Notes: generated by a model from the letters alone, not told the origin. Counted from the first letter of the stretch, positions 7,901 through 55,800 are shown. The stretch: DNA of 64,000 nucleotides from Takakia lepidozioides (GCA_030704615.1 CM060734.1:51584001-51648000); one strand, 5' to 3'. Program-made: numbers and translations.

Positions 7901-10900
7901 ACTAAAACATGGGTTACATGGCTATTATACACGATCCATAGTTAAGATAAGAATACCTTCGGGTGGACCAACAGAACAGGCACAACATCAACCCATTCCT
8001 GACTAATGAAGGCGATGAGAAGGTGCAAACAACATGCCACAAGCGCAGCATGCAGAACTGCTATGAAGCTTCCTCCGCGACCCTCCTGTATCAACACAAG
8101 CCTTCTTAACATGAGGGCGCTGATCCAAAGATTCCAGATAAGCCCCAGCTAGTCCCCAACAGAAAGATGACCAAGTCTGCTGAAGGGACTGCACCCCAGC
8201 AAGCCGCTGATGAACACACATACCTGCTCCATGTTTGCCAAAACAATAAGCATGTACATCACCAGATCCAGAATCTGCAGGCGTATCTTCACTTCCTGCA
8301 GCAATATCTGCAACAGAAGAAAGCTGTGATTCATCTTACTTACGACAATACAGAGTCAACTGAATCTTAACTAGAGAGGTGGTGAAGTTAGAAGTTATGC
8401 CTTGAAGAGACTGCCACGACGTGTTGTTTAAAGGCAGTCTATTTGGCACACAGCCACTGGCCTACAATGAAATTGCTCTAAAATTTCAGACAAATCTACC
8501 ATGATCAACATACTACAGCTAGTTGGTTGGGAGAGCATTTCTGCTCTTCCGGCAGTCAAGATGACCATTCCACAACTACTGAATATATTGTACTCATAAG
8601 ACGTTGTTTGCCGTAGTTTTGTGGCCATTGACCCCGTGCCCAGTTTGAGCGGGAACAAAAGGGACAGAACCTACCTCTGTCAGGGGCTGACGTTGGTAGT
8701 AAGACTTACCTCCATATAAAGAATTAATCCAGGTTTTCCAGATATCCTCTAGAAATCCCTTCACACAAGCATCAATCTGCTGTGTGTGATTTGCCCAAAA
8801 ACTAGGCCTCAGGAGGGCCTGGGCTTTTGGCTCAGCCTCGAGACTTTCAAAGTTGGTAAACAGGGGTACAGGCACAATTCCCTTAATAGATTTGAAGAGA
8901 GCGTCTCTTTGGTGAGAGAACCCCGGACAGTGTATCAGAAAATGAATACTGTCTTCAGATTGCCCACACAACGGGCAATTGCACTCTCCCTTTCCTCTCT
9001 GCTTCTGTTTGCTGTTCAAAGGTAGGCTTCCTGCCCTGAGTTTAAATTTCAGTCTAGTGCCGAGAGTGGGTAGACCCTTGAGGTCATCCAAGATGTCCTC
9101 CCCCATGTCACAGACTGGAAACAAGTTCAGGGAAGTTTTCTGCCTAACTTCATTTTCATCAGACAATCTCATGGCAACAGACATGGCTGAGGACACTACA
9201 GCCTCTAAGTCAGATTTATCCAGCAGGGTCAAGACTTGTGGATCCAGGTCCAGGTCCTTGAGGATGTCTTCTACTCTCTTCTGCCAGGACTTAGCCTGTT
9301 TGACAGGGCGGTCCTGTTTCCAAGATATAGAGTCGATTAATTTAGGATATCTGGTGTTGGGCATATGTTGCAGCTGACCCCACCATCTGACCTTGAATTC
9401 ATCTCGTCGGGAGCTTAAGGACGGAATGCCAAACTCACCCCGAACAGCCACATTGGCTGTTTTAGAGCATGCTGACATACACTCCTTAAGCACCCCCACT
9501 TGAATGGATTCTAGAGACTTAGCCTGGTTGGAGTTATCAACCCATATAGCAGATCCGTACTCCAAGGCAGGTCTAATAACGCGACAAAGCATGGTTTTCT
9601 TAACCTCAGAGTTGACCCCTCTGCAGTGGAAAAATTTAGTGAGCCCCAGAGCTTTGCCCTTGCCAGTTTGAACAACTTTCCAGATATGTGCATCCCAATT
9701 ACAATTGGAGGAGAACTCAACGCCCAGGTAAGTGTAGGAAGGGAGGACCGGGATCTCTTGGCTACCCCACTGCCACTTAAGATCACTTCCTCCCTCTCCT
9801 CTGTTGTTGAATGCTACCACTGCACATTTGCTGACATTAGCCTCTAGCCCCCAAAGATCAAAGTATCTCTTCGCGCAATCAATCAACTCCTGGAGATTGG
9901 TTGGAGTCTCCCCTATGCCTGCGAAGTCATCCGCAAACATAAGGGCTGGTATGGTGGTATCACCCACCCTTAACCCAAATCCCACTTTCCACATCCTCGA
10001 GGAGTTGATTGATGAAAACATTGAAGAGAAGAGGGGAGAGAGTACATCCTTGAGCTACACCTTGGTCTATGTCAAAGAAGTTGGACTTCTGTCCGTTAAC
10101 AGTGACACAGCTTTTGGTGTGAGCATACAAGTTGTGGACAACTCTCCACATCTTTCCCTTGATCCCACAAGACCAGAGGCGGAACCATAGGCCATCTCTC
10201 CACACTGTGTCATAAGCCTTTTTGACATCCAGGAATAATTTATAAGTGGGTTTCCCTTCTTTTTTCCTTCCCTGGATAATCTGGCTTAGAGTGAAGATAT
10301 GATCCACACAGCCCCTGTTTCGCCGAAAGCCAGCTTGGCCTTCGTGGAAACAACCTCTAGACTCCAGATCAACCTCGAGACGAGTACTTATAACTCTGCA
10401 GAATGTCTTGCCAACAGCATTGAGGAGCGTGATGCCACGGTAGTTCCCCGGTTCTTCTCTGTCACCCTTCTTGTATAGATTGACAATGACCCCCTGTCGC
10501 CAGCGAAAGGGTTTCATTTCAGTCTTCCAGATAAGGTTAAAGAGGAGAACTAGGGCCTTTATCATGGGATCGCCACCGTGCTTGATAAGCTCGTTGACAA
10601 TACCATCAGGTCCACCAGCTTTATATCCATGTAAATGTTCAATTGCTTCCACAATCTCAGAAGAACTAATGGGAGCATTAGAAGCCATTGAAATATACTC
10701 CAGTTCATCAGGGCTGTTTTGAATCATAGGAACAGTTTTTCCAACTGTGTCCCTCCATTCAGCAGAAGACCCCTCACTGTTAGACCTAGAAGTTCTGCCA
10801 AGGATACTGTAGTGAGTTTCAAAGGTTTTGACAATGTCAACCGATGAAGTCACCACTGCACCTTTAGTAGTCTTCAGCGCTTGTACTTGCTGACCGTTTT

Positions 10901-13900
10901 TCGGTATCTTTACGGAGCTGGTAGTACCTCGCCCACAATTCTCTGTTGGTTTCCAAATTGCAGCACTCTTTATAGAGGGCTCGTCTCTCAGCTATCTTGA
11001 GTTTAATCTCATTAGTCCACCAATTAACTGCTCTCCCAATGATCTTGTCAGCCACGGAGGAATCGAAACTCTCCCAAGAGTCCACTGCTCTTTCGACTTC
11101 ATTTCTTGCGTTAACAGAGCGTGACTGAAGTTCTTGGAGCGATTGGACAAAATGAGGGAGAGCCTCTTGCAAGGCCTGGACGTACTCAGCCTTGACCTCC
11201 TCATTGTGGAATTTTTCTATGCGCCACTTCCGAATCGAACGTTTCACAGATCTCTTGGTGGTGGGAAAACACCTTTTGATCTCAGTCCAAACCAGGAAGT
11301 GGTCAGAGGTACCAATATCAGTTCTGTCGATCAACACATTGGCACACTGGGGGAACAAAATTTTGTCCATTGTCCACAATGGAACGTTCACCAGTTTGGG
11401 GTTTCTCACGAGTCCACTGCACTTGGTCACCTCTTGTCCTGTTATTCAAGGTCAAAAGCTGAAGCTCTTCTAGACAGTTAATTAGCCGTCTGCCATTAGA
11501 ATTCAGCTCGTCCTCACCAAAAGGTCCAATGAGATCGTCCTGATGGATGCCTTTGCCCACCCGGGCATTGAAGTCCCCCAATAGTACCACCTGACCTTTG
11601 GCAAGGAACGAAGCACAGTCCAGCTTTACATCTTCGAAGGCCTTGTCTGCGTCAGCACTAAGGGTCCCCTCTGTGGGCATGTAAACACAACCAACAAAGA
11701 GGTCCTTTGTACTCATGCCGCCCTTCAAATTCAGTTTTAGCCAGATACTATGCTCGTACCTCAAACCCTTGTTGATAATTTCACAATTGTCAAACAAGAA
11801 ATCACAGACAAAGAATCCGACCCCTTTTTGACCGCGTTTGGCAGAGGCTGCCTTGAGAGTACACATCTTACCTGTCCATTTATAACCAATGACATCTCCA
11901 ACCAGTTTATCCAACGTTTCCCATGTTTCTTGCCCAGCACAGATATGAATATCATTGGTCCGAAGAACTTGTCCCACTTCAAGTTGTTTCCTTTGGTTGG
12001 TCAACCCTGAGAAGTTGAAAGTGGCCAGCCGCAAGCCAGCCCTTGGCGTGTGAATTGTTTGTCGTCTAGGTAGCTTGTGATTGCTCCTGGACGGCCAACC
12101 GTTCTGCAAAGGGGGGACAGTTACCCCATGTGTAGATTTTGCTCGTCTTGTGTAAACTTTGAGAATTGGTAAACCATTCAGGGTACCAAATCTTTCAGTT
12201 ACACGACGCACAGGCTCCGCACACATAGGGGCAGATTGTCCGTCAGACTGCTTGGGGACAATTACCCCGTGTATAGATTTTGCTCGTCTTGTGTAGACTT
12301 TGAGGATTGGTAAACCATTTAGAGTACCAAATCCTTCAGTTACACGACGTTCAGGCTCTGCACACTTTAGGGACAGATTGTCCATCTGACAGCTTGGGGA
12401 CAATTACCCCGTGTATAGAATTTGTTCGTCTTGTGTAAACCTTGAGGATTGGTAAACCATTCAGAGTACCAAATCCTTCAGATTCAGGACGTTCAGGTTC
12501 CGTACACTTAGGGGCATCTTGTCCTTCTGGCTGTTTGGATTCAACCTCATCCAGAGCATCAAACCGATTAGAAACTCTCAAGTTGAAGTTGTTGCCCTTG
12601 GTTGTCTTCCTAGAGCGCCCCATTGAATCACCAATGTCTAAGACCGCTCTCCAGCCAGTCAAGGGACGAACTTCTTTGAGATTGAATTGATGCGGGACTC
12701 TATTAGAAGCACTTTTGGTCATTGCAACCTTCAACGTACCCCTGTTATCAAGTCTCGAGATGGTACCATTAGCCATGAAATCCAAGCCTAAGCTAGAGCA
12801 TGTAGTTTTAAAGGACACATCGTCCATCCTGGGATTCACCCCAAAAACTACACATGAAGCCCTAGATTTGGCATAAGTAACCAATTCCCAGGGATCACCC
12901 TGAGGAGTGTTGATGTTGATAGGAGCTAAATTTTTGATTGTTTTCGCAGGCCATAAGTTTAAGCACAGGAACCAACCCGAGCCCAAGTGCCCAGTATGCT
13001 AGACAGAGCATACGACTGCCCAATTTGGGCGGAGGGGCTGCCCCCAATCGGTAGGAGTCCGCTTGTTACCATTCAGAGATCACACTCCAGGGAGTTGCAG
13101 GGAATGGCCCGTGTAGGCATATTCTAAAGAGGGAAAGGCCCCAAGCTTTCCAACTAAATCCAATGCACTACCTTACCTGAAGCAAAGCGCTTCAGGTCGA
13201 AACAAACAAGGACACGAGGTCACAAGGCCGGCATTTAGTCACAGAGACATTAATGTACTCCCGTTTCAAGTCCACCCAATGTCAATAGGCTTCCTAGAGG
13301 ACAGGGAGAGAAACTACTGAATATAGTATGTTAATAGATGGCAACTTGCAGTTACACTCTCACAATGTGCAGATGAAGTGCCTGATCAAGTTTGGAGTTG
13401 CGCGTAGCCAAGGCACTGAGAGAGTGCAGGAGACGGACAGCACGTAGCCAATAGCGTAAGCGTGGCTCCCCACTGCTCGAAGCCACACATGCCATTAGAT
13501 GCAGGGGCAGGCATGTTGCCAATCGCTCCACATCCACCTATCAGCCACTCCTCCCCCTCAACCCAATTAATATGGCTCTTCTGTTCTACACATACACAGG
13601 TTATCTGCACAGCCATGACAGCCATGGTGGAAACAAAGAACATTAAAGCCCAGGTAAAGAAAAGTGGACTCACCCGCAGTAAGACACCTTTGCAAGAGTT
13701 CACTCGCAAGAAGAAGTTATCTGACTCCTGCAGCAGCTTGTACATGTCATGCGTTCGTAGTGCATGGAGTTCCTCCACAGCCACAAATTCATCTGTGACC
13801 TGTTTTTCCCAACCTGTCATTCATCGCTTCATTGCCACCCCCCTCTCTCTCTTTCTCTCTGTCAACTCTCTAGGCTACGGCAAACAACGTCTTATGAGTA

Positions 13901-15273
13901 CAATCTCTGTCAGTCTCTGTCTTGGACTAAATGTTTATATCAAGGTAAGTCCCACTGCTGGAGTGAGCCCCTCACAAAGGTAGTGTCTGTTCCCTCTTGC
14001 TCTGCCCAAACTGGGCACGGGGTTGAAGGCCACAAGGCTATGGCAAACATCTTATGAGTACATTCTCTCTGCACTCTTTGGGCTTCCTGTGGATGTTATT
14101 ATCTTGTGAGATTGGGGGACTGGGATCAGTGGAAGGAAATATTGAGCCATTAAGGTCTCTTTACTGGGGACGATGATCGGCATTTTATCCCCAGCACATG
14201 AGCAAATCTGCATCTTCCCCTGGCAATTGCTACCTGCTAGCAAGTGCATTTAAATAACAGAAGAATCTCGGAGGGATATGTCAGTTCCGAAGAATGGCAG
14301 AATTCGTTGTACACCATGCTCTACCACCTTCTGATATGCATTGCAAGAAACTATCGCTTTTTATCCATGGGACTCAAAAAGAAGCAAGGAGAGGATCAGA
14401 GAGGATCTCAGAAAGATCCAACAGACATGGGGATCAGCTAACCAGCTCAGATCAAATCCCTTCACAGTCCTCGGACAAAACTGCATCATCCTGCGTCCCT
14501 AGTTCTTAGCTAAATTCTCCACCTAGCTTCCACAAAGTCTGAGTCAGTTCCTACATCCAATAGACCAAGACAGGCAGATGCACTAACAGGACTCGTCAGG
14601 CTATAATTTGGCCAGTGTGTAGCACCCAAGGAGGGCTGACAGAAACTTTTTGCCCTACAGACTACCAGATGAGAAGATACAACTGTCCTTTCAGAGGCTG
14701 GCCTGCAGCTACGAGGACCTAAGTGTTTAGCAGCTTACCTGCATGAGGGACTCCAATTTTTAAGAGCAGTGGGATATTTTTCGGTTTCTTGTACGTCAAC
14801 AGTGCACAAAAGGTCAACTCTCTCCCTCCATGCAGACGTACAAAAAAAATCTTTGCAAATCCATCAGGGACAGAAGTTAGAATATTGACTGAGACTAACA
14901 GAGCATCCCGCTGATTTTGCAGACAGGCTTATGATGCTTTCAGACCAAATTGCGACAACCAAACAGTAGGAAATCAAACGTGCATAAATGATATGAAGAT
15001 GAAAAAGTATCAGAATCCAAACCCGAAACCAAATCATGCACAACATGTATGAGCAAGACACTCACAATACTCATGAACGCTTGCAAAAGGTGACCATTTC
15101 TCAGCTTAAACATGCAACGTAAGATATTAATGCGGAGTTGCACGCATTCCCTTAAACTCTCCTCGTGTCCTCCCCATCAAATCACCGATCAAAATGGAGC
15201 AAAAAACACAAAAAGAAAACTGCCAACATACATTCACAACGCGCCGCGTCATCTCTTCTTTGGGGACCGTCAT
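1956..15273 (-). CDS. NDX: Nodulin homeobox (NDX) protein, multi-exon
   Basis: Reconstructed exons: 15273-15232, 13799-13674, 13537-13382, 8307-8224, 8085-7957, 7736-7512, 7271-7140, 6898-6803, 6607-6443, 6307-5995, 5796-5671, 5215-5146, 4838-4784, 4399-4214, 3846-3241, 3054-3020, 2556-1956. N-terminus (VEELHALR...LATCLPLHLMA...SKLDQILLQEVK) and LRLADIFSDDSNFR match plant NDX. The atypical homeodomain (KRKRNIMNEAQI...QLKNWLNNRKARLAR) is split over three exons. First exon and the 4.4-4.8 kb junctions are less certain. Confidence 0.88.
8588..13311 (-). mobile_element. Near full-length non-LTR retrotransposon (APE endonuclease + RT + CCHC; RTE/RTEX-like), frameshifted, inside an NDX intron
   Basis: APE motifs (LATFNFSGL, QETW, LGDFNARVG, SDHFLV), RT motifs (GPDGI, NYRGITLL, QAGFR, LDVKKAYD, QGCTLSPLLF, FADD, YTYLG) and C-terminal CPLC..EDSIHFLIHC, spread over five ORF pieces. 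14-bp TSD AACTACTGAATATA at 8574-8587 and 13312-13325. Confidence 0.95.
12121..12530 (-). repeat. About 3 tandem units of 141/142 bp within the LINE, encoding a 47-aa repeat (..FGTLNGLPILKVYTRR..)
   Basis: TTACCCC-starting units at 12121, 12262 and 12404. The peptide repeats three times in the ORF track. Confidence 0.9.
13872..13903 (+). mobile_element. Ultra-short (32 bp) 3' end of the same LINE family
   Basis: AGGCTACGGCAAACAACGTCTTATGAGTACAA is identical to the 3' end of the 24586-25128 copy and is flanked by TC-rich sequence. Confidence 0.85.
13923..14062 (+). mobile_element. 3' end of a diverged subfamily (B) of the same LINE
   Basis: Colinear with the LINE's last ~140 bp (AAGGTAAGT...CAAACTGGGCACGGGG...CACAAGGCTA..CTTATGAGTACA). 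Shares diagnostic CTGGAGTGAGCCC with the 55.3-kb copy and is followed by TTCTCTCT. Confidence 0.8.
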
Positions 15274-16077: not shown

Positions 16078-20399
<4,322 letters not shown>

Positions 20400-21513
20400 G
20401 AATAGGGGCATTGGAATGCAGGAGTAGAATTGATGTTATATATGAGGGGTTGATTGTACAGACGAAGTGTGGCGCGCCATGTGCTGGCCATCATTCTTTC
20501 CTAATGATTTGCGCAGTGTAGTGTGGTGCCATTAGAAGTTGTGCCCACCAATTGTGGGTGCAAATTTATTGCACGTCATCCTATGTTATTGGTATCTCAC
20601 CATTTGCACTTGGATCATGTTTCAGCGAGTTCAAGTTTGCAGGTTGAGCAGCTGTCATTTTGTCATCTCACCACTGCTCCTCCCTACTTCCATAGGGAGG
20701 GCTGTTGCAGTTGTTAGACATGTAGCTTCAGGGAGGACAGCTAATTGGGTACCCCTTTTTTATAGTGTAAGAACACTAGATGCTACACTAGTGTTCCAAC
20801 AAGTATTTAACTTGTTTCACTCGTTGTTTTCTGGCTTGTCTCCCAACTGATTTGATTGTGGACACTGAAACTTTTACAGCAGTTGAGCACTCACTTCAGC
20901 ACTTGGCCGGAAGGAACCCTTGGCACAGCTGCTGTCATCAAATGCAGCCAATTTGTGGTTGTAACTCCTGAATCTAGTTGGTTTTCATCTGCCAGCTGTT
21001 CAAGTCCAGGCCCATGCTTTCTACTACAATCTGTGCAGGTCTGTGCAAATGGGTTTGTAGAGGTGTCCCATTGGGACACAGTTCTAAAGATTGGTATTGG
21101 CATATTGGTATGGGCTGTTAGAGAGCAAGAACAATCAATCCTCTCCTTGTGAGATGTATATATTACGAAGTTCTGAGTGCACAGACGGCTTCTGCAAATG
21201 GCTGCAAGATTGAGATATTCTCACTGCAGTGAAAAGAGACGGGGGACACCCAGATTAGTAAAAAGAGTAACAGTAGAGACCCTTAAGTCAATGGAAACTC
21301 AGAACCTCTCTTGTCCACTTTTTGAGTGAACAGGCATGCAGTCTGGGACAAGGGGAAGAGTGCTGAAACTGGAGAGAAGCATAAGATGATCAGAACTGAT
21401 GTCATGGGACAAATGAGTCAGAAAATGCTGTGTAGTCTAGCGGTAAAGTGTATAGAGAGCCTCACAAATTTTGATCAAATTACAAAGCTATATACTAGTC
21501 ATGGCTGTGACAG

Positions 21514-23235
21514 CTACAGCATTTGCTGCACAATACCAAGGTTAATGGTATCGCGCACCATGAGCACCACACCAAGAGCTAGTAGCAGCAAAATACCCGA
21601 GGACATGATCCCCTGCTCCACTCCATCTGGCAGCTTCTTGCCTCCTCTCACAGCTTCCAGTGCTACAAGGGCCAAGTATCCTCCATCTAAAGCAGGCAGA
21701 GGCAACAGATTCACCACTGCCAAGTTTATGTTCACTATTGCAGCAAACTGAAAAAGACCAGCTACATCTGCCCGCGCCACTTCAGCGCCAACCGCCACAA
21801 TTGCTACAGGACCTGACAATTTGTCAGCTGTCTGCGCGAAGTTGAAAAACACCTGCCTCAATCCATCGATCACAGTGGTGAAGAGTCTGGAAAAATCCCT
21901 GCTTGCCAGTACTGCAGCATCTGCCAAGTTTTCAGCCCTCACCCGGTGTGGCTTTGCATTGGGGGACAGCTGCACCCCAATCTTGCCTGACCCATCAATG
22001 GCCACATCAGGCACCACCTGCAAGCTCACCTCATCAGCACCACGTTTTACACTGAGCACCAGCTTGTGATTAGGACTGCGTTTGATGGTGTCCACCAGAT
22101 CAAATACGGACGCCTCCCTGCTCCCCAACTTGCGCCCATCCACTGCAGCTACCACATCCCCTGCGAACACGCCCGCTCTGGCAGCAGCGGAATTGACTAT
22201 GACCTCTGGCACTACCACCCCTGGAAAGAATTCCTGCTCCAGCAACCCTACTGTGAGCACCTGAGTGAAGAGCACTGTGTATGCAAATAGGATGTTGGCC
22301 AACACTCCGGCTGAGATAACAAGGGCTCGCTGAGGAATGGGCCGGTTCTTGAGCAGGTCTGGGTCATCAGCTTTGTATGCACTCTCTGGATCATCATCCG
22401 GGAAGGCAACGAACCCACCCAAGGGGAATGCTCTCAGAGAATACTCCACCTTCTTACCTTGAATCTTGGCTAGTGTGGGCCCAAAGCCAATGGCAAACTT
22501 CGTAACGTGAATGCCCTGCAGCCGTGCAGCCAGGAAATGACCAGCTTCATGCACGGTGATGATGGCCGCCAGTACCCCCAGCGCTTGCACCACAGACTGC
22601 GGACCCTCTAGCGCCAGCGCAGGTAGCGTCAGCAGTACCATACCCTGGACTTTCCCGATTACCCCCCACCTCTCTACTTCTGTTTGTCCTCCACCTTCAC
22701 AACCCCTTGCCAACTCGAGGTGGGCTCTGCTTTTCGGCTTTCTTCTCTCATCCTCCAGCTCTCCATCAAATGCTTCTCCAACAACTGATTCCTCCCTGAT
22801 GGTATGCTGCCCTAAGTTCTGGGACGGTCGGGGCTCCATGCCAGCCCGCCATCCTTTTCCTTGCTTTAAGCCTTGACCTGAACAATCTGGGCCTCTCCAG
22901 CCTTTTACTCCAGGCCTCAAGTGAATCCATCTACAACTTCTCCTCCCTAACGAGAAAACCCGCTGAAATCGACGAGCTTGCGGGTCTAGAATTTGCGAAT
23001 TGTGCAATACCCGCAATGAATGCACAGGGCTGCGGCCTGCCTCTAAGCATGGCTTCCGTCTCGCCAGTGATTCCGGTATTGAACCCCCTGCATAAATAAC
23101 ACCAACTGTGGTGTGTCGAGGTGGGCACAGCTGCCATTCACTTCTACTACTACTACAAGTAGCACACAGTAGCTGACGAGGTAGAGTCATGGCAGTGGCC
23201 ATGGCCAGCAGCCCATGCCACGCCCTTTCACCCAC
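21514..23235 (-). CDS. Plastid membrane zinc metalloprotease, M50/RseP (ARASP-like) with PDZ domain; single exon
   Basis: 573-aa ORF with HEAGH zinc motif, FAIGFGP, PLGGFV, a PDZ-like segment and NLLPLPALDGG. The long N-terminal extension is consistent with a transit peptide. Confidence 0.93.
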   Translation of the reverse strand: MGERAWHGLLAMATAMTLPRQLLCATCSSSRSEWQLCPPRHTTVGVIYAGGSIPESLARRKPCLEAGRSPVHSLRVLHNSQILDPQARRFQRVFSLGRRSCRWIHLRPGVKGWRGPDCSGQGLKQGKGWRAGMEPRPSQNLGQHTIREESVVGEAFDGELEDERRKPKSRAHLELARGCEGGGQTEVERWGVIGKVQGMVLLTLPALALEGPQSVVQALGVLAAIITVHEAGHFLAARLQGIHVTKFAIGFGPTLAKIQGKKVEYSLRAFPLGGFVAFPDDDPESAYKADDPDLLKNRPIPQRALVISAGVLANILFAYTVLFTQVLTVGLLEQEFFPGVVVPEVIVNSAAARAGVFAGDVVAAVDGRKLGSREASVFDLVDTIKRSPNHKLVLSVKRGADEVSLQVVPDVAIDGSGKIGVQLSPNAKPHRVRAENLADAAVLASRDFSRLFTTVIDGLRQVFFNFAQTADKLSGPVAIVAVGAEVARADVAGLFQFAAIVNINLAVVNLLPLPALDGGYLALVALEAVRGGKKLPDGVEQGIMSSGILLLLALGVVLMVRDTINLGIVQQML

Positions 23236-23743: not shown

Positions 23744-26330
23744 ATGGCGCTTGCCAAAAGGGGCATTGTCAACACCTCCTTTTTCCAGAATTCAGCATCC
23801 TGCACGCTGTTGAATGCGCGCCATGCATGCCTGGAGGTGCATCGCAGGGGGTATTGCGAACCAGCAAGTACAGCCATGTGTGATCCCAATGTAAAAACAG
23901 CCACTCCCTAAAGTTAGTCCTCAATTTCGGTGGCCACACGTTGAAGCATGCATACAGCTATATATATGCACCCCTGCACACACGCATGGACATGGGTTTT
24001 GGCATTTCCTTGCCTGCACCTTGGCTGTCAAGCGCATGGCTTGCCCAGACAGAAACTTTGTCTCCCCTTTTAGTAATTCATATGTGGGTTGGAGCTTTGT
24101 CAGTTTTGTCTTTTACCCCTGGCTTGGTCTGGTTGTTTTGTGGAGTGTTGGTGGATTTTGTACCTGCGGATGGTGGATTTGGAGGTGGGAAGAGCTATCC
24201 TGCAATAGAAGAGACAGGCTGATAAATAGATTCGGGCAGATGGATCTGTGTGGACATGCCACACTGGCATCAGCTCATCTGCTGTTTGCATCAGGCATTG
24301 TGGATGGGGTCAAAGTGCACTTCCACACCAGATCAGGGATGCTCACAGCAACAAAGGGGTTTCCGGCTGTGAAGAGTATGAGAGATCACCTTCACAGGAG
24401 GAAGAGAAGGTGCCCAAGGGCCGACATGAAGCGGCCAGGGAGCAAAGTAGTGCAGCTTACCTTCCCGCTGGTGCCTTCCTCCGCGTGCAATGATGTCTCT
24501 GTTCTCTTTGATGCTCTGGGAAGCCCCCAGGTTACCTGGGCTGGCCAAACTAGCTCTGGTAATTATTTGATTCTCTCTCTCCTCTCTGAACTTGTTTCCA
24601 GTCAGTGACATGGGGGAGGACATCTTGGATGACCTCAAGGGTCTACCCACTCTCGACACTAGACTGAAATTTAAACTCAGGGCAGGAAGCCTACCCTTGA
24701 ACAGCAAACAGAAGCAGAGAGGAAAGGGAGAGTGCAATTGCCCGTTGTGTGGGCAACCTGAAGACAGTATTCATTTTCTGATACACTGTCCGGGGTTCTC
24801 TCACCAAAGAGATGCTCTCTTCAAATCTATCAAGGGAATTGTACCTGTACCTCTGTTTACCAACTTTGAAAGTCTCGAGGCTGAGCCAAAAGCCCAGGCC
24901 CTCCTGAGGCCTAGTTTTTGGGCAAATCACACCCAACAGATTGATGCTTGTGTGAAGGGATTTCTAGAGGATATCTGGAAAACCCGGAGTAATTCTATAT
25001 ATGAAGGTAAGTCTTACTACCAACGTCAGCCCCTGACAGAGGTAGGTTCTGTCCCTTTTGTTTCCGCTCAAACTGGGCGCGGGGTCAATGGCCACAAGGC
25101 TACGGCAAACAACGTCTTATGAGTACAATCTCTCTCGCTCTTTATCTCTTTCTCTCTTCAATATCTTCATTACACACAACAAATGGTGTCATTAATATCT
25201 GCCTCGTGTGCTCTTCGGTCGTTTCCAGCCAATGTGACGCCTGTTGTTGGACCAGGTATGGTGATAATTAAAGCTTGCAATTAGACATTGACTTCAACTG
25301 TTAGAGAGCTAACACAACACAAGTGGAGTTTGGTCATGCAAGGGGGGTCTCATTTCCTTTGGGTTCTGAAATATTTAAGACTGCGAGACAAACATGGATG
25401 CGGAATGTATGTTTAGTTTGCCACTGACTTGTTCCAGAATTTTGGATATGCAAAGGTTGAGCTACCCACGAGCAAAGATGTGGAGCCTATAAAGCCCACA
25501 AATTGGTGGATCTAAATGGTCCAGGTGGTGTGTCATTGTGACGGCAAGGCAACTGTATCCAAGGATAGTGAGTTCAATTTTGTGTCATGGTTCTTCCACC
25601 CTAAACTGGGTGTAAATGAGGTATGGAAAGCTTACAATGTGCTAATGTGGGCCATGTGGAAGTTGTGATGGTGTGCCCTGGATGACATCCCCCATGTGGT
25701 TTGTTACAATTTGCACTCCAGAACCATGTCTGACATGTTCATGATGATGTGCAATTGTGTACATCTGCCTCAGAGAATCTGATTTTTAGAATCGCAACAC
25801 CTCCATGACCAGGATACAGCAACAGGTAGTGTTGATTGCACATTGGGTCCATATTTAGCTGAAGGCTTACCAGGTGAGTTGTGGTTTTCCAGAAATTTTA
25901 GACAGCCTCTTTCTTACAAACACATTATTGTCATGTTGCCTCCACTCCACAGAATGGTATTACGCATTATGAAGACCTCAAGTTGGTTACCTGCATTAGC
26001 CAACTTCATTTCATGTGAGACAGGTTTTGATATGCTTGCTGGTTTCAGTATTCTACTGTGCCCCCCATGGATGTATGGGATTCCCCTCCATGATCTCACC
26101 CTACCTTCAAACAGACTGGAAATTGAAAAGCATTCTTCCATTTCCCTTCTGATCCTTCACTGATGTTCAGTTCCAATATATGGTCATTTGTATGAGACAA
26201 AGGGATCACATTGAACAGGCCTCTTAGCGTGGAGGCAGATTTGAACTGCGGGTAGATGTGGAGGCTGGCCAAGCTTACATACAAGGTGGTGCTGTTTTAG
26301 TCATGGCAGGAGTTGTTCTCCACACGATGG
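23744..26330 (+). pseudogene. PhzF/PhzC-like (diaminopimelate epimerase-like fold) pseudogene
   Basis: DLCGHATLASAH..F..G.V....HFHTRSGMLTA (from ~24240), FVSWFFHPKLGVNE (to 25620), DTATGSVDC in place of the usual EDPxxGSAxC, and AS*RGG...VLVMAG. In-frame stops at 25513-25515 and 26225-26227; LINE fragment at an exon end. The 5' boundary is uncertain. Confidence 0.8.
24586..25128 (+). mobile_element. 5'-truncated LINE copy (543 bp), same family as 8588-13311
   Basis: Encodes the same C-terminal 176 aa with about 10 substitutions. Ends TTATGAGTACAA, with TC tracts on both sides. Confidence 0.95.
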
Positions 26331-40969: not shown

Positions 40970-41717
40970 TGTACTTACAACTGTTTGGAAAGACATGAAC
41001 TCCACAATTGTTAATGCTCTTGTAACGGGAGGTGTAGAAGATGAGGAATCCACCATTGGTCGTGGTGTCAAAGGATGTACCTCGTCATTGAAGACTTCAT
41101 CTGGAAGGGGTTGGACAGTGACCGATACTGTAGGTCTCAGTAAAGCAGCAAGTGGTACGGTCTCAACAGAAGAGGCGGTGGAGAAGATAACAACGGTTCT
41201 CGAGAACGTAAAGAGAGGGCGTGAAGGGTACTCGCACGTGATATATGTCAAAGCTGCATGCATGAATCTGAGCCTCAGGTAGGCACAAGAGCGCGGCGGC
41301 TCGGTCATTGCCTAAAAGTACTCTCAAACCTTCCCTGTTGTTGTTGACATACTGACTCCACTTCTCTTTCGACTTTCGTCTGAGTATCGTCTCTTCTACC
41401 AGTTTCCTAGCTTTGCGAAGAAGACTCTTTCGATGTACAAACATCATATGCCTCAAATATAGTTGTGAGATCCTCCGTTCTTCACGGAGTCTCTCGTTGT
41501 CCTTGGTGAGCTCGATCAATAACTGAGCAGCAACCACAACATCTCTCCTCAGATCCTTCGTATGGCAGTCGTTTCAAGCTGTATTTGTAGGTGCAGAAGA
41601 TGCATTTACCATTATTTTTACCAAAGAAACTGAAAAATGACTAACAAGCAACTGGGACGACCTTCCTGATTGGGTAAAAAACGTAGGCAGAGATAACATA
41701 CTTATTACAGATATATC
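40970..41717 (+). pseudogene. Degenerate partial copy of the AIG1-like GTPase at 58012-58782
   Basis: Closely similar DNA to the 58-kb gene in the opposite orientation. The P-loop is partly deleted, a foreign 302-bp insert occupies 41259-41560, TGG>TGA occurs at 41638-41640, and the 3' end is truncated. Confidence 0.9.
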
Positions 41718-42090
41718 ACATGTTAGTAGGTTGCATCCCCGTAGAATTGGACGGTATGCTTGAGCAGACCCCTCGCTCCTCCCTTCCCCCGTCTTGTTGC
41801 CCCTGGCCCAAACCCCTAGTACTATATCCCCTACTCCATGTGTACCCCCTGTTGGCCCCCCTTGGACATTGTTGACCCCACGGAAAACTCAGAAGTGGAC
41901 AACAATACAAAGAGAATTGACCACACGCAGTGTGGAAACTTTAAGTTATATCTTATGTTGTGCATGGGCCTTGACACGTTTTTAGGATGCAAGTTAGTTG
42001 GGTGCACTAGAATGGATAGCATGAGTTACTAAATTATTCAAACCTAAGAGCCTCATTCATTATCTTCTTAAGGTTAGTACCCAACTGCAC

Positions 42091-42282
42091 CTGACAGCCA
42101 CAACTATGATATTTTTTTTAATCTTTTACTATTTTGATTTGGTGTTGATTCGGTGTTGATACATACATGGCTTGCTTGAATCGATACAAGCATAACTAAT
42201 TGTAGCAACATAGGATTAAAATAACATCCACATCTAGTGTTGATTTTGTGTAGAATTAGTGTTCATTCATTTTTAGTTGTTA
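42091..42282 (+). repeat. Dispersed AT-rich repeat, copy 1 (copy 2 at 47036-47237)
   Basis: CAGCCA..ACTATGATATTTTTTT..ATCTTTTACTATTTTGATTTGGTGTTGAT..AATCGATACAAGCA..AAAATAACATCCAC..TGATTTTGTGTAG is colinear in both copies. Confidence 0.85.
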
Positions 42283-45558: not shown

Positions 45559-47035
45559 GATCCCAAGGCTGACAAAGCTTCAAAGTTGTCAGAAAATTAA
45601 TTCCTGAGCTTATAAGAATTATGGTGCCGCCTACCGGCTAAGACCCTCATTCTGGAAAGGGAAGACAAAGTTGCAAGAATCGATTCTCCCAATGTCGCTA
45701 TCTCAAAAAGAGCCAACAAAGCCCACAATTTGATCTGACAAAGTGCACAAGCCGAGGAGAAGCATATGTAATATGAAATCCATTTGCTAGCTTAGAGAGA
45801 TGGAATTTATGAAGACTTTGGGTCTTTTGCTATTTTGCTGCTCAAGTTTGATCATAGGTCTTGTTGTTTATGCTGTGTAGATGGAGATCACCATGGTATT
45901 GACAGACAATGACAATCCTAGAAATCCACTCCACAACAATTCTTTGAAGCAAAGATGGAGGACTAGATAGTAAAACCCATACATAACTTGTTCCTAGATT
46001 CAGCATACACATCACAAAACTCCGGGTACTCTCATCCCTTTTGTAGATCAACTGAGGATCTATGACATAGATCAACACTCATCATAATTTCGTTTGTCTG
46101 CACAACGACTTTAAAGGCCGAGTTACACTGATCTCCTGCAAAAATGAAAGCTCATAGCGAGACGAGAGCGAGACAGGGTTCCCCAGTCCCCTTATAACCG
46201 CCTTTCAACCTCTCATGATGACCCGAATAATAGGTTGTTTGCCTGGTCTTTAACAATTGTGAACACGACAACGGAGTTGCAAAATCACCAGAATCATGCA
46301 ATAATCCGTTTGTCAAAACATGATGCAATTCCCAGTCAATTCCATCACTAAAGACTTGGCTCTTGACCTTCAATCCCTCCAACTCAGAATGCCCATGTGT
46401 ACGGGTCTTACAAACACTTCACTAATCCATAATCCTCAAGATTTTGATTGGATGTGTCGAAGGTCCAGATTCAGAACTGTTGCGGCTTGGAATGATTGAC
46501 TAGATAAGGGAGATGAACCATAAATGGACAGTTTACCTAGTGCTCATGGCTAGAATGAGTGGAGAAAAATGGACATAATTTTGATGGATTAGCAAATGAA
46601 AAAGTAACAAGATGTAAGCGGTTTCATGAATTATAATTGAAACTTGAAATTGATACGATTTTCCAAAGTTTGGACTCATAGACACCTATTTCTGACACAT
46701 AGGCCCCCCCAGAAGTGAACACCATTCATCCTATTATGGTTACTATGCCATCCAATTATAATTCTACGTTGTCTTGAAATATACATAAAGATAGGCTAAT
46801 TATGAAATTAATATTAACCTTAAATGGACATCAAGTAACCTTAAATGACTATCCAGTATGCTAATGTGGCATGCCAACAACATGCCCAACAAACCTCCAT
46901 ATGACGGTGCACGTCCCAATATCTGCGTTATAATATACTAAAGGAACACTAATATGGGCTACATAATGGAGCTCCTTGTTGCTCACCGTTGCGGGCTCCC
47001 TTTGCTTGCGTGCGTGCAACTTGAGCATACTGGAG

Positions 47036-47237
47036 CTGGCAGCCAGTACTATGATATTTTTTTTATCTTTTACTATTTTGATTTGGTGTTGATTTGGTGT
47101 TGATACATGCGTGGCTTGCTTGACATTGAATCGATACAAGCACAACTAACTGAATTGTTGCAACATGTAGGGTTAAAATAACATCCACTCATAGCGTTGA
47201 TTTTGTGTAGGATTAGTTCGTTCATTTTTAATTGTTA
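47036..47237 (+). repeat. Dispersed AT-rich repeat, copy 2
   Basis: Direct-orientation match to 42091-42282 with small indels. Confidence 0.85.
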
Positions 47238-47889
47238 AAGCCATGAGGAGGGTGATCCTAAGCTATAGGTGATGAATTGGTCCCTTACCATTCAAAAGAC
47301 AAGTTGAGCTACAATCCATTCATGTAGAAACAGAGTGACTAGAAGTACCCATGTGCAGAAAAAACTCTAGATACTTCTGTGGTCCTTAGCTCTGATAGTG
47401 GACTCTTATAAGCTTGATTTAATAGTGAGTAATAGGCTAGTTGAGCATGATACTAGTTACGTCCATAGATTGGCTGACAATGAAGCACCTATAGTGAATT
47501 CCAAATGTGGGCATCTCATTCTCTCCTCATTATGAGTGTTTTTGTGTTTTGGTTACACCCAAAGTTGCTTGAACGCAAGATGTAGGAAGGATTCCATTGT
47601 GTTGGATGCGGAGCCACCGCTTGGTGATGCAAAGGCTCTTGCCTCCCATCGACGATGTCTACGATCTCAAAAACGTCACAACCCTATTGAGCCTCTTACG
47701 TACAAATCCTATCAGCAATCCAGAACTTGAACCTCCAAACTATGGGTTTTGGTTTTTCCGATGAAGAGCATCTAGACGCGATGCATCACGGTTTTGCCCT
47801 TCTCTGACAACGATGCAAGGGCACCTTTTGATTCCACGTTCAACTTAGTACATTGGATTAGAACTTGTAGAAATTCTAGTGGTTTGTTA

Positions 47890-48884: not shown

Positions 48885-49812
48885 TTAACAAATGACATAA
48901 ACAGCCTATTCAAGAAAGTCTTGTTCCATCCATACTTTAAATTGGACCACCGAACATTAAGATCACCCGTTGATGTAGAACGTTATGAAGGGACAATCTC
49001 AGATATAGCAGATGATTCAAAGCAACTTTCAATTGATGGCCACACATTTAGGTGTTTCTACCAATTGTGCAACTGTTATTTGTCACATAGGCTTGGAGTA
49101 AGTTAGTATTCTTATGCTAGTTCGATCTAGTTCTGATTTTGGTGGCGGTATTACAGGGCCATCAACACTTTTACAACCATTTTCTCGACTTGGCAGAGAT
49201 CAGAATTCAACCTTGTGAAGATTCATGCTATGAGTCATTACATGGATTCCATTCCTGAGGTCAGGGGCTACTTTTGAATATAGTTCCAACCTCTATGAGC
49301 ACTTGCATATTGCATTAATGAAAGCAGCCTAGGGTCAGCAACACTAGGAAAGATTATTCTGGGTATATTGTCAAACATAATAGAAGGCTCCAAGCTCTTA
49401 GGAGGAGATAGGGTATGGATCATACCTTGACCTACTTGTTCATGCACAAACATTCATCTCTTTCTATATGTAGTCACATTTGACGGACTGATATTAAAAG
49501 AGATCACCTAGACCACTCACCATTCTCAGATTGTTTAACTTCATCTGATTGTTGTCATTTATGTTGAGGCAGTGGAGTCAAGTTTCAATGTCTTTTCTGG
49601 ATTTCAAGCCAACCCTTGAACTGCCCCACTGCAAGGAACAAGAAGACAACCACAATAGCCACCTCCCACTGCCTGCTTTCTCAGCATATCTGCAATTTCA
49701 AAGGGGGTGAAAGTGAACCCTTGTGGGTTTCAACCCAGTACAGGCTATGGTGTGGCAAGGAGTCTGAGAGTCTGAGAAGAGGAGAGAGACGAAGGAGCCT
49801 GGGGGAGGATCC

Positions 49813-52800: not shown

Positions 52801-55800
52801 TGCATGGCATGATATTTTTGACAGCACCTCTTTATAACCAAACTGAGTAATATGATGATGTAGGCTTACGATAAGACTGCAAGGCTTCTTGGGCTCGACT
52901 TGAAGCACGGAGGGGGTCCTGCACTTGAGCAAATTGCCCTTGAAGGGGATCCTAATTCCTGCAAGTTTTCTGTGAGTCAACAGTACACTGCCTGTCAAAG
53001 AATGCCATACGCAGCTATGGGAAGTTCTCTTATGCTGCATCTCCTACTTGCATCATGCGGACTACAAAATACACTTCGGGGACTTGTGGGGATTGGCTTG
53101 CTTATGATTCCAGCTACAGTTCTCCCCTCACATTGAAATAGTCTTCCATGCATCTGTCTCTAGAGTATACAGTTACCCTCAAGTCTGGAAATAAGAAGCC
53201 ACACCATAAATTTCTTTGCTTGTAATAGTTGCTCAGCATGCCTATCCTTTTTTGACCCATGTTGTATCATTTGACAGGTGCCAATGCGCACTCAGCGGCA
53301 CTGCAACTTCTCATATGCAGGCCTCAAGACCCAAGTCCGGTTGGCAATTGAATCTAGAAACATGTCAGTGTTCACAGGTCATCCATTGCATCTAAACTTT
53401 GTTGATCAAGTTCATCCTTGCTGTACCATAAGAGCAAGGGTGGATATGGCCCAATGGGTGAGGTTGGCATTGCTAATAGAACAAACCATGCAAGGCTATG
53501 TCATTATTAGATAGGGTTATGCTGATATATTTGACATGGGTAGAGAGACGCAAAATTACTGGAATCTTTGCCTACCATAACCTCTTGCCTGTAGACCCCA
53601 TGCCTGAGCAGAAAAGGTGGAAGAGGGGATTTGAATTTGGAGAAGTTTTCAGTGATGACCTACTGAAGTGTGTGCACAATGTTGAGGAGCTCAACGCCTG
53701 GGAATAGTTTTTCTCATAAAGTGTGTTGTGGGTTTAAATGGAACGCAGTAAGGCTGATGTGCCAGTATCAGAGGCCAGTAGAGAGGAGCGGCGAATGCGG
53801 GCCGACATTGCAGCATCTTTTCAGGCAGTTACTCATCTCCTTCGATAATCTGATATCCACTTTGCTTTTTGGACAGGCAATGGGTGAGGGCAGGTTGTAG
53901 GAAATGCATTGAAGATGGGAGCAGTTTTGAGCATAATGAGTGTAGTTGACCAGCATCATTGTATTGCATCTTTGTAATTCTGGCTTCACTTGGCTGCACA
54001 GAGTGTTGCAGTGCTACACTTAGAAGACAGATGCCGCAGAGCTTTGGAGTGGGCGCGCAACATTGATTCCTCCATAAGTTGCCTGGTAAAGCTAGTGGTT
54101 CTGAGAAACATACGAATTGACTTGACATATGCTTTTCCTTGGCCGCGAATTCATAGAGTTCCGTCCGTCTCAGATAGAATCTTGTTAAAGGACTATGGGA
54201 CATGGGGATGATCGTGGCCCTGAGGTAGAGAGATTTACCTGTCATGAGCTACAGCCAGAGCTGTAATGAAATGTTGGTATCTAGTCTTTCCACAGTATGT
54301 TCTACTTGAATGACGGAAATCTGACTAAACGTTACATATCAAATGTGAGTCTGGAGGTCATTCTGCAGTTTACAGAGAGAAATATCTTTGATGTTGCTCT
54401 GCTGGATGTGGGTTTTCATGGGTAGGTGGTGTCAGGAGGTGTTGCTTCCAATCAAGTTGTACGGAGCAAGCTCAGAGTGGTTGCACAAGATGTTGGACTT
54501 CACCTTGTCTGCCCACCCCCACGGCTTTGCACAGACAATGGTCTTTCTCTCTCTCTCCCTCTCTCTCTCCCGCGGACGTTATAAAGCACCATTTCATTTC
54601 ATTTCTCTCGCTACAAGGCTACGGCAAACAACATCTTATGAGTACATTCTGTCTGTCTGTCTGTCTGTCTCTCTTACGAAGTTCTGTTCACCAACTTTCA
54701 AAGTCTTGAGGCTGAGCCTAAAGCCGTGGCCCTGGCCCTCTTCAGGGCCAGTAGGTACGTGTTGAGGTGCAAGTAGCTCTCGAAGGCGTCAGCAGGCAAT
54801 CCCCTTGAGAAACAATGCTATCTACATAGGAGAGGGGAAGGAAAGGTACCTCTGATGGTGGTTGTATCACTTCTTCCACCGATGGTTTCTCCCTACCTTG
54901 CGCTAGGGCGTTCGCCTCCTGCGTCTGGGGCGGTTCCTCTCCTCCTTGGTCTGGTGACCTTGATTCTGGACTTAGGCCCTCCCCCAGGCAACACCTACAT
55001 TCTCTTATGAAGTTCAGGTCATAGTGTTCAAAGAAAGCATGTTGGCATGTTCTACAAGAGCTAATGTGGCTGTTCGGGGCAAGTTTGGCACACCTCCCTC
55101 AAGTTCTCAAAGAGATGAATCCAAGGTCAGATGGTGTGGTCAGTTGAATCGCATGTCTAATAGATAAGCGACAGTATTTCTGGGAAGCAAGACCGTCCTA
55201 GTAAACAGGCTAAGTTTGGCAGGAAAGGGTAGAAGAGATTTTCAAGTATCTGAATATTAGTCCAGAAGAGTTGACCCTATTGGATGAAGCTGACCTGGAG
55301 GGGGTTGTTCCTAAAGCAAGCTAAACTAATTGTCTTTACAAGGTAAGTCACACTACTGGAGTGAGCCCATCACTCAGGTAGTTTCTGTTCAAACTGGGCA
55401 CAGGGTCTACGTTCACAAGGCTATGGCAATGGCAAGCAAAGCCTTATGAGTACATTCTCTAACGAAGTTAGGCATAGAACTTCCCTGATTTTGTTACCAG
55501 TTTGACATGGTGAGGACCTTGGGACACCAGCTGCCCAGAACTCACAGCCATCAGTAGCGGCAGGGGTGACCACCGAGAGCCACTTCTTGGTCAGAGTGTG
55601 GTGCAGGTGTATTTATTTGCGTTTAGCCTGAGGGCAAATGGAGGCCCTTTGCCCTTCATCAATCTATCCATGGCAATCCATGCAAATGGAAATCTGGGTG
55701 AGTGGATGACCAGACCCAGGTATGGGTATGATTTCATGACCTTGATCGCTTGCTGTGGCCAGTCTGTGGATAGACTGGTAGGTGGAACATCCTGCAACGT

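What the first reader, a model, noticed from the sequence alone, without database searches (positions are those of the whole stretch)
8574..55454. Tail-less LINE family with a 6-nt 3' UTR that favours intronic TC tracts
Seen: six 3' ends in 64 kb (8588, 13903, 14062, 25128, 54646, 55454) all stop at ...CTTATGAGTACA(A). TGA is the ORF stop codon, so the 3' UTR is about 6 nt with no poly(A). Five are followed by TC-rich sequence, and the three subfamily-A fragments are also preceded by it. The long copy runs straight into a non-TC TSD, which argues that TC is the target and not a tail; its 5' end begins TCTCTCCCTGTCCTCT, possibly carried from a TC donor site. Every copy lies inside a gene or pseudogene. 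Known: microsatellite-targeting APE retrotransposons exist in animals, while typical plant L1s end in poly(A). Inference: a microsatellite-homing RTE/RTEX-like family whose RNA recognition signal must overlap coding sequence. This is the best candidate for an undescribed system here.
Basis: partly seen in the sequence, partly recalled or inferred. Interest (0 to 1): 0.8.

Follow-up and report, generated by a model that had tools for sequence, protein, structure and literature searches.

The report
Tail-less plant LINE targeting TC tracts
A very abundant jumping gene (LINE) in this moss-like land plant has no poly(A) or repeat tail, stops six bases after its stop codon, and inserts next to TCTCT inside pyrimidine-rich tracts, often in introns. 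This behaviour is known from a few fish and insect LINEs, but I found no report of it in a land plant.

Summary
Six copies end at exactly CTTATGAGTACA plus one more base, A or T (0.36 matches expected by chance). TGA is the ORF stop in three diverged subfamilies, so the 3' UTR is 6 nt and there is no tail.

Target-site duplications begin directly after that last base in four copies (14, 14, 9 and at least 8 bp). Four of the six start with TCTCT (background 0.0019 per site, p = 2e-10). The TC sequence is therefore target DNA, not a tail.

One 14-bp site was used twice, and two TC tracts each hold several independent insertions. Contigs from public runs show that the family is extremely abundant and that its 3' flanks are TC-rich genome-wide.

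A two-tier RNA hairpin lies in the last 45 codons. It keeps its pairing through compensatory changes, including in a relative with 42% protein identity. This supports a recognition signal inside coding sequence.

Three points are not supported or not settled:
- The RTE/RTEX label is untested, because no curated references were on hand.
- "Every copy lies in a gene" is only partly true.
- The targets are TC-rich tracts rather than strict microsatellites; one copy sits at TATAT.

This scan found the same family before on other DNA of this genome (s1-461034, s1-473378).

Verdict: a new variant of a known kind.

The parts
8588..13311 (-). c1: full-length LINE copy (4724 bp), subfamily A. It has a 5' UTR of about 325 nt that starts TCTCTCCC, then one long reading frame broken into five pieces in this copy, and it ends TGA GTACAA.
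   Evidence: ORFs and Pfam; self-BLAST; junctions.
13312..13325 (-). 5' copy of the c1 target-site duplication, TATATTCAGTAGTT (14 bp).
   Evidence: Read directly.
8574..8587 (-). 3' copy of the c1 target-site duplication. It starts directly after the last element base.
   Evidence: Read directly.
11408..12025 (-). Apurinic/apyrimidinic-type endonuclease domain of c1.
   Evidence: PF03372 E = 7.9e-5 and PF14529 E = 1.4e-3, both below Pfam's cut-offs on this broken copy. Relatives carry both domains.
9716..10469 (-). Reverse transcriptase domain of c1, split by a frameshift near 9990.
   Evidence: PF00078 E = 4.4e-25 plus the continuation piece. Matches human L1 ORF2p at E = 3e-24 and R2 at 6e-19 among solved structures.
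8927..8977 (-). CCHC-like zinc-knuckle motif, CPLCGQSEDSIHFLIHC (C-x2-C-x7-H-x4-C), in the C-terminal domain.
   Evidence: The same motif is at the same place in relatives P0018, P0033 and P0004.
12113..12538 (-). Three tandem 141-142-bp (47-aa) units in the N-terminal coding part, upstream of the endonuclease.
   Evidence: Self-BLAST, 84-88% identity; translations.
8671..8699 (-). Two-tier RNA hairpin inside the last 45 codons (outer stem CUACC/GGUAG, inner stem GUCAG/CUGAC, CCC loop). Its counterparts are at 25017-25045, 13953-13985 and 55352-55382.
   Evidence: Folds. 7 of 13 pairs carry compensatory changes; 84.6% of cells pair against 25-45% when partners are slid; 0 of 500 shuffles reach this.
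13872..13903 (+). c2: 32-nt 3' fragment, subfamily A. Its duplication TCTCTGTCA lies at 13856-13864 and 13904-13912, with 7 extra bases at the 5' junction.
13923..14063 (+). c3: 141-nt 3' fragment, subfamily B (78% identical to A), with the same frame and stop. It abuts the TC flank of c2.
24583..25128 (+). c4: 546-nt 3' fragment, subfamily A (96.5% identical to c1). Its duplication TCTCTCTC (8 bp or more) lies at 24572-24579 and 25129-25136. It sits in a 35-nt TC tract that starts 11 nt after a 5' splice site of a PhzF-like gene.
54610..54647 (+). c5: 38-nt 3' fragment (A-like, one mismatch in the 24-mer), followed by (TCTG)5. Its duplication is unclear (TCTCTC against TCTGTC).
54684..55000 (+). 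P: degenerate 3' fragment of an older subfamily (element positions 4446 to the end), ending GGCAACACCTACAT. It is flanked by copies of the 14-mer TCTCTTA[C/T]GAAGTT at 54670-54683 and 55001-55014.
   Evidence: BLASTN and TBLASTN; motif positions.
55015..55455 (+). It is flanked by the same 14-mer at 55001-55014 and 55456-55469.
   Evidence: TBLASTN residues 173-279 and 438-471.
55456..56108 (+). R: an older, decayed LINE copy that P and Q hit at an internal TCTCT site. It keeps a CCHC remnant near 55800-55870. Its possible end, GTTATAAATTACAT (56095-56108), is followed by TTCATT and then a TC tract. Its short head is the 14-mer at 54670-54683.
   Evidence: BLASTN 55461-55522, 81%; ORF with the CPAC...HVLFH motif; sequence. 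The 3' end is probable, not firm.

Best explanation
This is a young, very abundant non-LTR retrotransposon family of a bryophyte. Relatives encode one long protein of about 1,300-1,480 residues, made of an N-terminal region, an AP-type endonuclease, a reverse transcriptase and a C-terminal domain with a CCHC-like knuckle; the broken c1 spans about 1,460 codons over its five frames. Its RNA carries no poly(A) or repeat tail. Reverse transcription starts at a fixed last base, six nucleotides after the stop codon (shown). The endonuclease nicks the purine-rich strand of TC/GA tracts, so that the duplicated target starts T-C-T-C-T on the element's sense strand (shown for the position; the enzyme's own specificity is inferred). 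The second nick falls 8-14 bp downstream. Because the duplication regenerates the TCTCT site, the same site can be hit again, which gives head-to-tail stacks of truncated copies (shown once). With almost no 3' UTR, the signal that lets the protein pick its own RNA and start at the right base must lie in coding sequence. The invariant last 12 nt and a conserved two-tier hairpin about 90-120 nt from the end are the candidates (the structure is shown; its function is inferred). Introns carry pyrimidine-rich tracts on the coding strand, so sense-oriented intronic copies accumulate as a by-product.
For: Fixed terminus: 6 of 6 copies. In-frame stop in three subfamilies, with indels in multiples of three. 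Duplications start right after the last base: c1 14/14, c2 9/9, c4 8 bp or more, and a 14-mer present three times around P and Q. The first five target bases are TCTCT in 4 of 6 copies, TCTGT in one and TATAT in one; the TCTCT background is 0.0019 per site, so p = 2e-10. TC tracts extend beyond the duplications on both sides. Four of the six strongest plus-strand TC tracts in the window touch LINE junctions. The TC strand is always the element's sense strand (5 of 5). Genome-wide: summed k-mer depth is about 1e6 over the 3' part against 35-100 in the flanks, and loose ends just past the terminus give TC-rich consensus sequences in two independent runs and at a second copy. Hairpin covariation. 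Relatives have a single ORF with the same domains and no upstream ORF. One relative has a TC-rich tract directly after its stop codon.
Against: Only six to nine copies could be read base by base. No empty (pre-insertion) site was found in other runs. c3 and c5 have no clean duplication, so a short tail cannot be excluded for those two. One copy sits at a non-TC site. The hairpin evidence rests on four distinct sequences, and the structure was derived from them. As single sequences, the 3' 127 nt fold no better than shuffles. Endonuclease specificity is inferred, not measured.
Confidence: 0.75

Rival explanations
1. The TC-rich stretch is a variable microsatellite-like tail made by the reverse transcriptase, as with the 3' repeats of RTE, CR1 or L2 elements, and the true target is unrelated.
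For: Plant RTEs end in (GTT)n and green-algal RTEX in other short repeats (PMC3747384 table 3; PMC6007223). c5 is followed by a perfect (TCTG)5, and c3 and c5 lack clean duplications.
Against: In c1, c2, c4, P and Q the duplication starts immediately after the last element base. c1 has no TC at all. TC tracts also lie upstream of the 5' duplication copy and continue past the 3' copy.
Confidence: 0.07
2. Insertion is random, and the association with TC tracts comes from survival: only copies in introns, which are rich in pyrimidine tracts, are kept.
For: Most copies lie in introns in sense orientation.
Against: Survival cannot explain base-exact adjacency, where TCTCT begins at the first flank base (p = 2e-10). 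It cannot explain the strict strand rule (5 of 5), the reuse of one 14-bp site, or the very young copies (c1 and c4 are 96.5% identical; many contigs are 99% or more identical).
Confidence: 0.05
3. The target is chosen mainly by base pairing and not by the endonuclease. Transcripts read through into the donor's TC flank, or use the CU-rich stretch just 3' of the hairpin, and anneal to the nicked GA strand, so the preference is copied from donor to daughter.
For: There is no tail and no visible terminator, so read-through is likely. Donor copies mostly sit in TC tracts. The 5' end is also TC-rich. A CU-rich stretch follows the hairpin in all subfamilies and in relative L002.
Against: c1 integrated precisely at TATAT, with no TC carried over. 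The junction base (A or T) follows the subfamily and not the flank. There are no RNA 3'-end data.
Confidence: 0.2

Closest known systems
Kibi (TC) and Koshi (TTC) microsatellite-specific LINEs of teleost fish, with Waldo and Mino of insects (Kojima and Fujiwara 2004, as summarised in PMC3812793)
   Same: They are AP-endonuclease LINEs found inside TC-type repeats, with the repeat on both sides and no need for a poly(A) tail.
   Different: By my own recollection, not a paper read here, Kibi and Koshi belong to the Tx1 group, whose members have a separate ORF1. This family and its relatives have one long ORF, sit in a land plant, prefer imperfect TC-rich tracts and TCTCT sites rather than long perfect arrays, and reach a very high copy number. 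RT relatedness to Tx1 was not testable.
Plant RTE-clade LINEs and Au-like SINEs (Nishiyama and Ohshima 2018, PMC6007223)
   Same: Single-ORF endonuclease plus RT elements with a very short 3' UTR and no poly(A). The first base of the duplication is T, as here (6 of 6).
   Different: Plant RTEs end in (GTT)n and show a T stretch about 10 nt upstream of the duplication. Here there is no terminal repeat and no obvious upstream T stretch, and there is a long C-terminal domain with a CCHC-like motif.
RTEX elements of green and brown algae (PMC3747384 table 3; PMC4421812)
   Same: A non-L1, non-poly(A) LINE group present in the green lineage and in brown algae. This family's RT relatives include Ectocarpus proteins.
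   Different: The listed RTEX families end in short repeats such as (CA)n, (CAA)n and (CCAT)n. Membership could not be tested without reference sequences.
Stringent-type LINEs recognised through a 3' stem-loop (eel UnaL2 of the L2 clade; R2 for precise tail-less initiation). This comparison rests on my own knowledge.
   Same: A conserved 3' stem-loop and initiation at a defined base.
   Different: In UnaL2 and R2 the signal lies in a 3' UTR, and UnaL2 needs a terminal repeat. Here the stem-loop lies inside the ORF and there is no repeat.

Membership tests
RTE / RTEX clade of non-LTR retrotransposons | The RT domain groups with curated RTE or RTEX references in a phylogeny (RTclass1 / Repbase). 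| not testable with these tools
   No labelled reference sequences could be obtained. Hits carry no clade names. PDB holds only L1 and R2 RTs.
RTE / RTEX clade of non-LTR retrotransposons | A single long ORF with AP endonuclease and RT, and no separate gag-like ORF1. | tested here: met
   c1 has five contiguous frame pieces and no upstream ORF. Full-length relatives have one ORF of 1222-1480 aa, starting 200-830 nt into the contig.
RTE / RTEX clade of non-LTR retrotransposons | The 3' end consists of a short tandem repeat: (GTT)n in plant RTE, and (CA)n, (CAA)n and similar in algal RTEX. | tested here: not met
   The duplications start directly after GTACAW, and there is no repeat in c1, c2, c4, P or Q.
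RTE / RTEX clade of non-LTR retrotransposons | RTE insertion signature: the duplication starts with T, with a T stretch about 10 nt upstream (PMC6007223). | tested here: inconclusive
   The first base is T in 6 of 6 copies. An upstream T stretch is not evident in six sites, which are too few.
Tx1-group microsatellite-specific LINEs (Kibi / Koshi) | Copies are embedded in the target microsatellite, with the repeat on both sides. | tested here: inconclusive
   TC-rich tracts lie on both sides of c2, c4 and c5, but they are imperfect and 20-35 nt long. c1 sits at a non-TC site.
Tx1-group microsatellite-specific LINEs (Kibi / Koshi) | Two ORFs (ORF1 plus ORF2) and an RT that groups with Tx1. | tested here: not met
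   Single ORF in c1 and in four full-length relatives. The RT grouping itself was not testable.
L1 clade (the usual plant LINEs) | A poly(A) tail and A-rich duplication starts. | tested here: not met
   No A run at any of the six ends, and the duplications start with T.
Stringent-type LINEs with a 3' stem-loop signal | A conserved stem-loop near the 3' end, kept by compensatory changes. | tested here: met
   A two-tier hairpin in subfamilies A, B and C and in relative L002, with 7 of 13 pairs compensatory. That the protein binds it is not tested.

The most novel reading that the evidence does not exclude
Target choice is RNA-guided and heritable. The tail-less RNA is often made as part of a host intron transcript. 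It pairs, through read-through TC sequence or through the CU-rich stretch beside the coding-embedded hairpin, with the GA strand of the target, so each daughter inherits its parent's kind of landing site. The element would then need neither its own terminator nor a strictly sequence-specific nuclease.
Probability: 0.12. Interest if true: 0.8.

Novelty: new variant of a known kind. Interest (0 to 1): 0.55.

Why it matters
A recent review describes land-plant LINEs as L1, with poly(A), or RTE, with (GTT)n (PMC9033089). This family has a different design. It has no tail and a 6-nt 3' UTR, its start signal is folded into coding sequence, and it prefers TC-rich tracts. It has nevertheless reached a very high copy number and sits in the introns of ordinary genes.

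It offers three things:
- A natural system for asking how a LINE protein finds the exact 3' end of its RNA without a tail.
- A test case for whether an AP endonuclease or RNA pairing sets microsatellite-type targeting.
- A likely explanation for sense-biased intronic LINE loads, and for the growth or decay of TC tracts, in bryophyte genomes.

Practically, annotators who look for poly(A) or terminal repeats will misplace its boundaries.

Tried and rejected
- **Collection scans for the 3' 20-mer.** The bacterial and archaeal genome collection gave one chance match inside a Clostridia MAG gene. JGI metagenomes gave none. Genome-wide flank logos could therefore not be built.
- **The search for related loci with a C-terminal alignment.** It returned only two 23%-identical loci; an earlier alignment was too loose to search with.
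- **Protein word search and full HMMER search.** No close relatives: the best hits are 35-48% identical, and no hit carries a clade or taxon name. Clade assignment from names failed.
- **ESM Atlas search.** Uninformative.
- **PDB sequence search.** The endonuclease piece found nothing. The RT matched L1 and R2 about equally, which does not discriminate clades.
- **Exact look-up of the neighbouring protease, to name the organism.** It failed. A homology search places the host nearest Sphagnum at 82-83%. The species stays coded.
- **Kapitonov 2009 (RTclass1).** The paper is not held.
- **Read laying.** Among the joints listed (15 shown, 274 more not shown), none skips c1, so there is no empty site.
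- **Whole 3' 127 nt folded singly.** Not more stable than shuffles. Only the local hairpin is supported.
- **c2 as a fusion of the element's 5' and 3' ends.** The 5' resemblance is TC-rich and may be chance. I left it as unexplained.
- **The three 14-mers as a 22-bp duplication.** I dropped this because the extra bases at 55015 onward are LINE sequence.
Full report
**1.

The 12-mer CTTATGAGTACA occurs six times in the window against 0.36 expected.

It ends GTACAA in c1, c2 and c4, and GTACAT in c3, c5 and c6. That last base follows the subfamily and not the flank.

TGA is the in-frame stop of the long ORF. Three subfamilies, only 73-78% alike, keep the same frame and the same stop. Their length differences near the end (3, 6 and 15 nt) are all multiples of three. 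The 3' UTR is therefore 6 nt, and no copy has an A run or a tandem repeat at its end.

**2. Anatomy**

The long copy c1 lies on the minus strand at 13311-8588 (4724 bp), between two perfect 14-bp direct repeats, TATATTCAGTAGTT.

It holds five abutting frame pieces with these features:
- an AP-type endonuclease (PF03372 and PF14529, both below Pfam's cut-off on this broken copy);
- a reverse transcriptase (PF00078, E = 4e-25);
- a long C-terminal domain with the motif CPLCGQSEDSIHFLIHC;
- three tandem 47-residue units upstream of the endonuclease.

I searched the pieces apart.

Full-length relatives from metagenomes and public runs have one ORF of 1222-1480 residues, with the same domain order and no upstream ORF. 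The family plan is therefore a single long protein.

The RT resembles human L1 ORF2p (E = 3e-24) and R2 proteins (6e-19) about equally, which does not place it in a clade.

The host is a bryophyte. The neighbouring chloroplast S2P-type protease is 82-83% identical to Sphagnum proteins and 73-74% identical to liverwort and other moss proteins.

**3. TC is target, not tail**

In sense orientation, the five bases after the last element base are:

| Copy | First five flank bases |
|---|---|
| c1 | TATAT |
| c2, c3, c4, c6 | TCTCT |
| c5 | TCTGT |

TCTCT occupies 0.19% of positions in the window, so four of six gives p = 2e-10.

The direct repeats that flank the insertions begin exactly at that base:
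- c1: 14 of 14.
- c2: TCTCTGTCA at 13856-13864 and 13904-13912.
- c4: TCTCTCTC at 24572-24579 and 25129-25136.

P (54684-55000) and Q (55015-55455) are each bracketed by the 14-mer TCTCT[T/A]A[C/T]GAAGTT, which is present three times (54670, 55001, 55456). P and Q are different parts of the element, so these are two events at one nick site that the first duplication regenerated. Both landed inside an older, decayed copy, R.

TC-rich sequence also lies upstream of the 5' repeat copies and continues past the 3' copies, where a tail cannot be. c1 has no TC at all.

For c3 and c5 no clean repeat is visible, so a short tail there cannot be excluded. c5 is followed by a perfect (TCTG)5.

In all five TC cases the pyrimidine strand is the element's sense strand. 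This puts the first nick on the purine strand.

**4. More than chance, and more than this window**

By a 20-nt TCT/CTC score, the flanks of c2 to c5 fall in the top 0.05-1.2% of all window positions. Four of the six strongest plus-strand TC tracts touch LINE junctions. Two tracts carry stacks of independent insertions: c2 with c3, and c5 with R, P and Q.

I laid contigs from four public runs on 8350-14300.
- **Abundance.** Summed k-mer depth is about 1.0-1.7 million over the 3' kilobase and about 0.2 million over the 5' end, against 35-100 in the unique flanks. The tool warns that this is not a copy number, but it shows great abundance and the expected 5' truncation gradient.
- **Youth.** Thousands of contigs are 99% or more identical.
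- **TC-rich flanks genome-wide.** Contigs that run off the 3' terminus give TC-rich consensus sequences in two independent runs (in sense orientation TTCTCTCTTGCT... and TTCTTTTTCTCTTTCT...) and again at c2.
- **The 5' end.** A unique junction contig starts at 13284. This places the repeat boundary at about 13311-13313, so the TC-rich 5' start belongs to the repeated unit.
- **No empty site.** Among the joints listed (15 shown, 274 more not shown), none skips c1.

**5. A signal inside coding sequence**

The last 12 nt are identical in all six copies, while the 12 nt before them differ between subfamilies.

About 90-120 nt from the end, just after a conserved GGTAAGTC (codons G-K-S), every subfamily folds into the same two-tier hairpin.

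| Sequence | Outer stem | Inner stem |
|---|---|---|
| Subfamily A | CUACC/GGUAG | GUCAG/CUGAC |
| Subfamily B | CACUGCU/GGUAGUG | GUGAG/CUCAC |
| Relative L002 (42% protein identity, metagenome) | GGUGUAU/AUACACC | GGAUGA/UCGUCC |

The hairpin in L002 sits at the same place.

On the alignment, 7 of 13 pairs carry compensatory changes. 84.6% of cells pair, against 25-45% when partners are slid, and no shuffle out of 500 reaches this.

There are caveats. The test rests on four distinct sequences, the structure was derived from them, and the whole 127-nt end is not unusually stable. That the protein binds this hairpin is inference.

**6. Gene context**

- c1 lies in an intron of a Nodulin_N-type gene on the same strand.
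- c2 and c3 lie just upstream of that gene's ATG, on the opposite strand.
- c4 lies 11 nt into an intron of a PhzF-like gene, in sense.
- c5, P, Q and R lie in an intron that starts right after a TsaD/Kae1-type exon, in sense.

"Every copy in a gene" is therefore only partly right. The sense bias follows naturally from a preference for the pyrimidine strand.

**7. What it is like, and what it is**

Microsatellite-specific AP-endonuclease LINEs are known: Kibi (TC), Koshi (TTC), Waldo and Mino (PMC3812793).

Plant RTEs have tiny 3' UTRs and duplications that start with T, but they end in (GTT)n and show an upstream T stretch (PMC6007223). Green-algal RTEX families end in other short repeats (PMC3747384), and brown algae carry RTE and RTEX (PMC4421812). 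This family's RT relatives include Ectocarpus proteins.

The single ORF fits RTE-like groups and argues against Tx1 and L1. The missing terminal repeat and the CCHC-like domain do not fit plant RTE.

No curated references could be fetched and no hit carries a clade name, so the clade stays open. The full HMMER search found only 37 cluster representatives at E <= 1e-30, the best 35-48% identical, so no close protein relative is on record.

My literature searches found no land-plant LINE with this behaviour. A recent review lists only L1 and RTE for plants (PMC9033089).

The scan itself met this family twice before on other DNA of this genome (s1-461034, s1-473378). My results agree with both notes and add the site reuse, the hairpin covariation and the resolution of the sixth copy.

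**8. Verdict**

This is a real feature and a new variant of a known kind. Confidence is 0.75 that it is a tail-less LINE that prefers TC tracts, with the TC sequence being target DNA. The mechanism of target choice (nuclease or RNA pairing) and the clade remain open.

Noticed in passing
window 54578-54592 and 56095-56108: Two short stretches, GTTATAAAGCACCAT and GTTATAAATTACAT, are each followed by TTCATT and then TCTCTC. They may be 3' ends of an older subfamily with TAA instead of TGA as the stop. The similarity is short (E about 0.001-0.01).
   Followed up: partly
window 13856-13871 against 13296-13311: The bases before c2 (TCTCTGTCAACTCTCT) resemble the element's own 5' start (TCTCTCCCTGTCCTCT). 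c2 could be a 5'-end to 3'-end deletion derivative, or this is chance similarity in TC-rich DNA.
   Followed up: partly
L007:5271-5330 and L006:4560-4584, 1-20: In distant relatives (33-36% identity), one ORF's stop is followed at once by a TC-rich tract. Another contig ends 2 nt after its stop and has G-rich ends on both sides. A minimal 3' UTR next to a simple-sequence flank may be a wider trait of this clade.
   Followed up: partly
window 21514-23235 (minus strand): A 573-codon uninterrupted ORF for a chloroplast S2P/ARASP-type metalloprotease, 82-83% identical to Sphagnum proteins. It is apparently intronless here.
   Followed up: partly
window 16400-20400 (plus strand): Exons of a CDC48/p97-type ATPase: the N-domain near 16928-17272 and the C-terminal ...DDDDLYN at 20049-20399.
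   Followed up: no
window 41001-41728 against 58275-58731: An inverted pair of repeats, 89-93% identical, from another repeat family. A direct pair (42084-42282 and 47029-47237) is 85% identical.
   Followed up: no
window 63490-63768: A tandem repeat with a period of about 92 bp, with copies 91-93% identical.
   Followed up: no
run X10 (organism B) on window 8658-11017: A run labelled as another organism holds pieces of this LINE at about 99% identity but very low depth (3-5). This points to a very close relative, a mislabel or cross-contamination.
   Followed up: no
P0006 (relative, 573 aa): A distant relative of the C-terminal domain carries a PF01693 (RNase H1 N-terminal / Cauli_VI) domain at its end, which this family lacks.
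   Followed up: no
L001:6116-6135: The only match to the 20-mer in the bacterial and archaeal genome collection lies inside an ordinary gene of a Clostridia MAG. It is a chance match and is not related.
   Followed up: yes
window 9982 and 12366: At two of c1's frame breaks, many other genomic copies differ in length (by 2 nt and 1 nt). The breaks are therefore private to this copy and not a feature of the family.
   Followed up: partly
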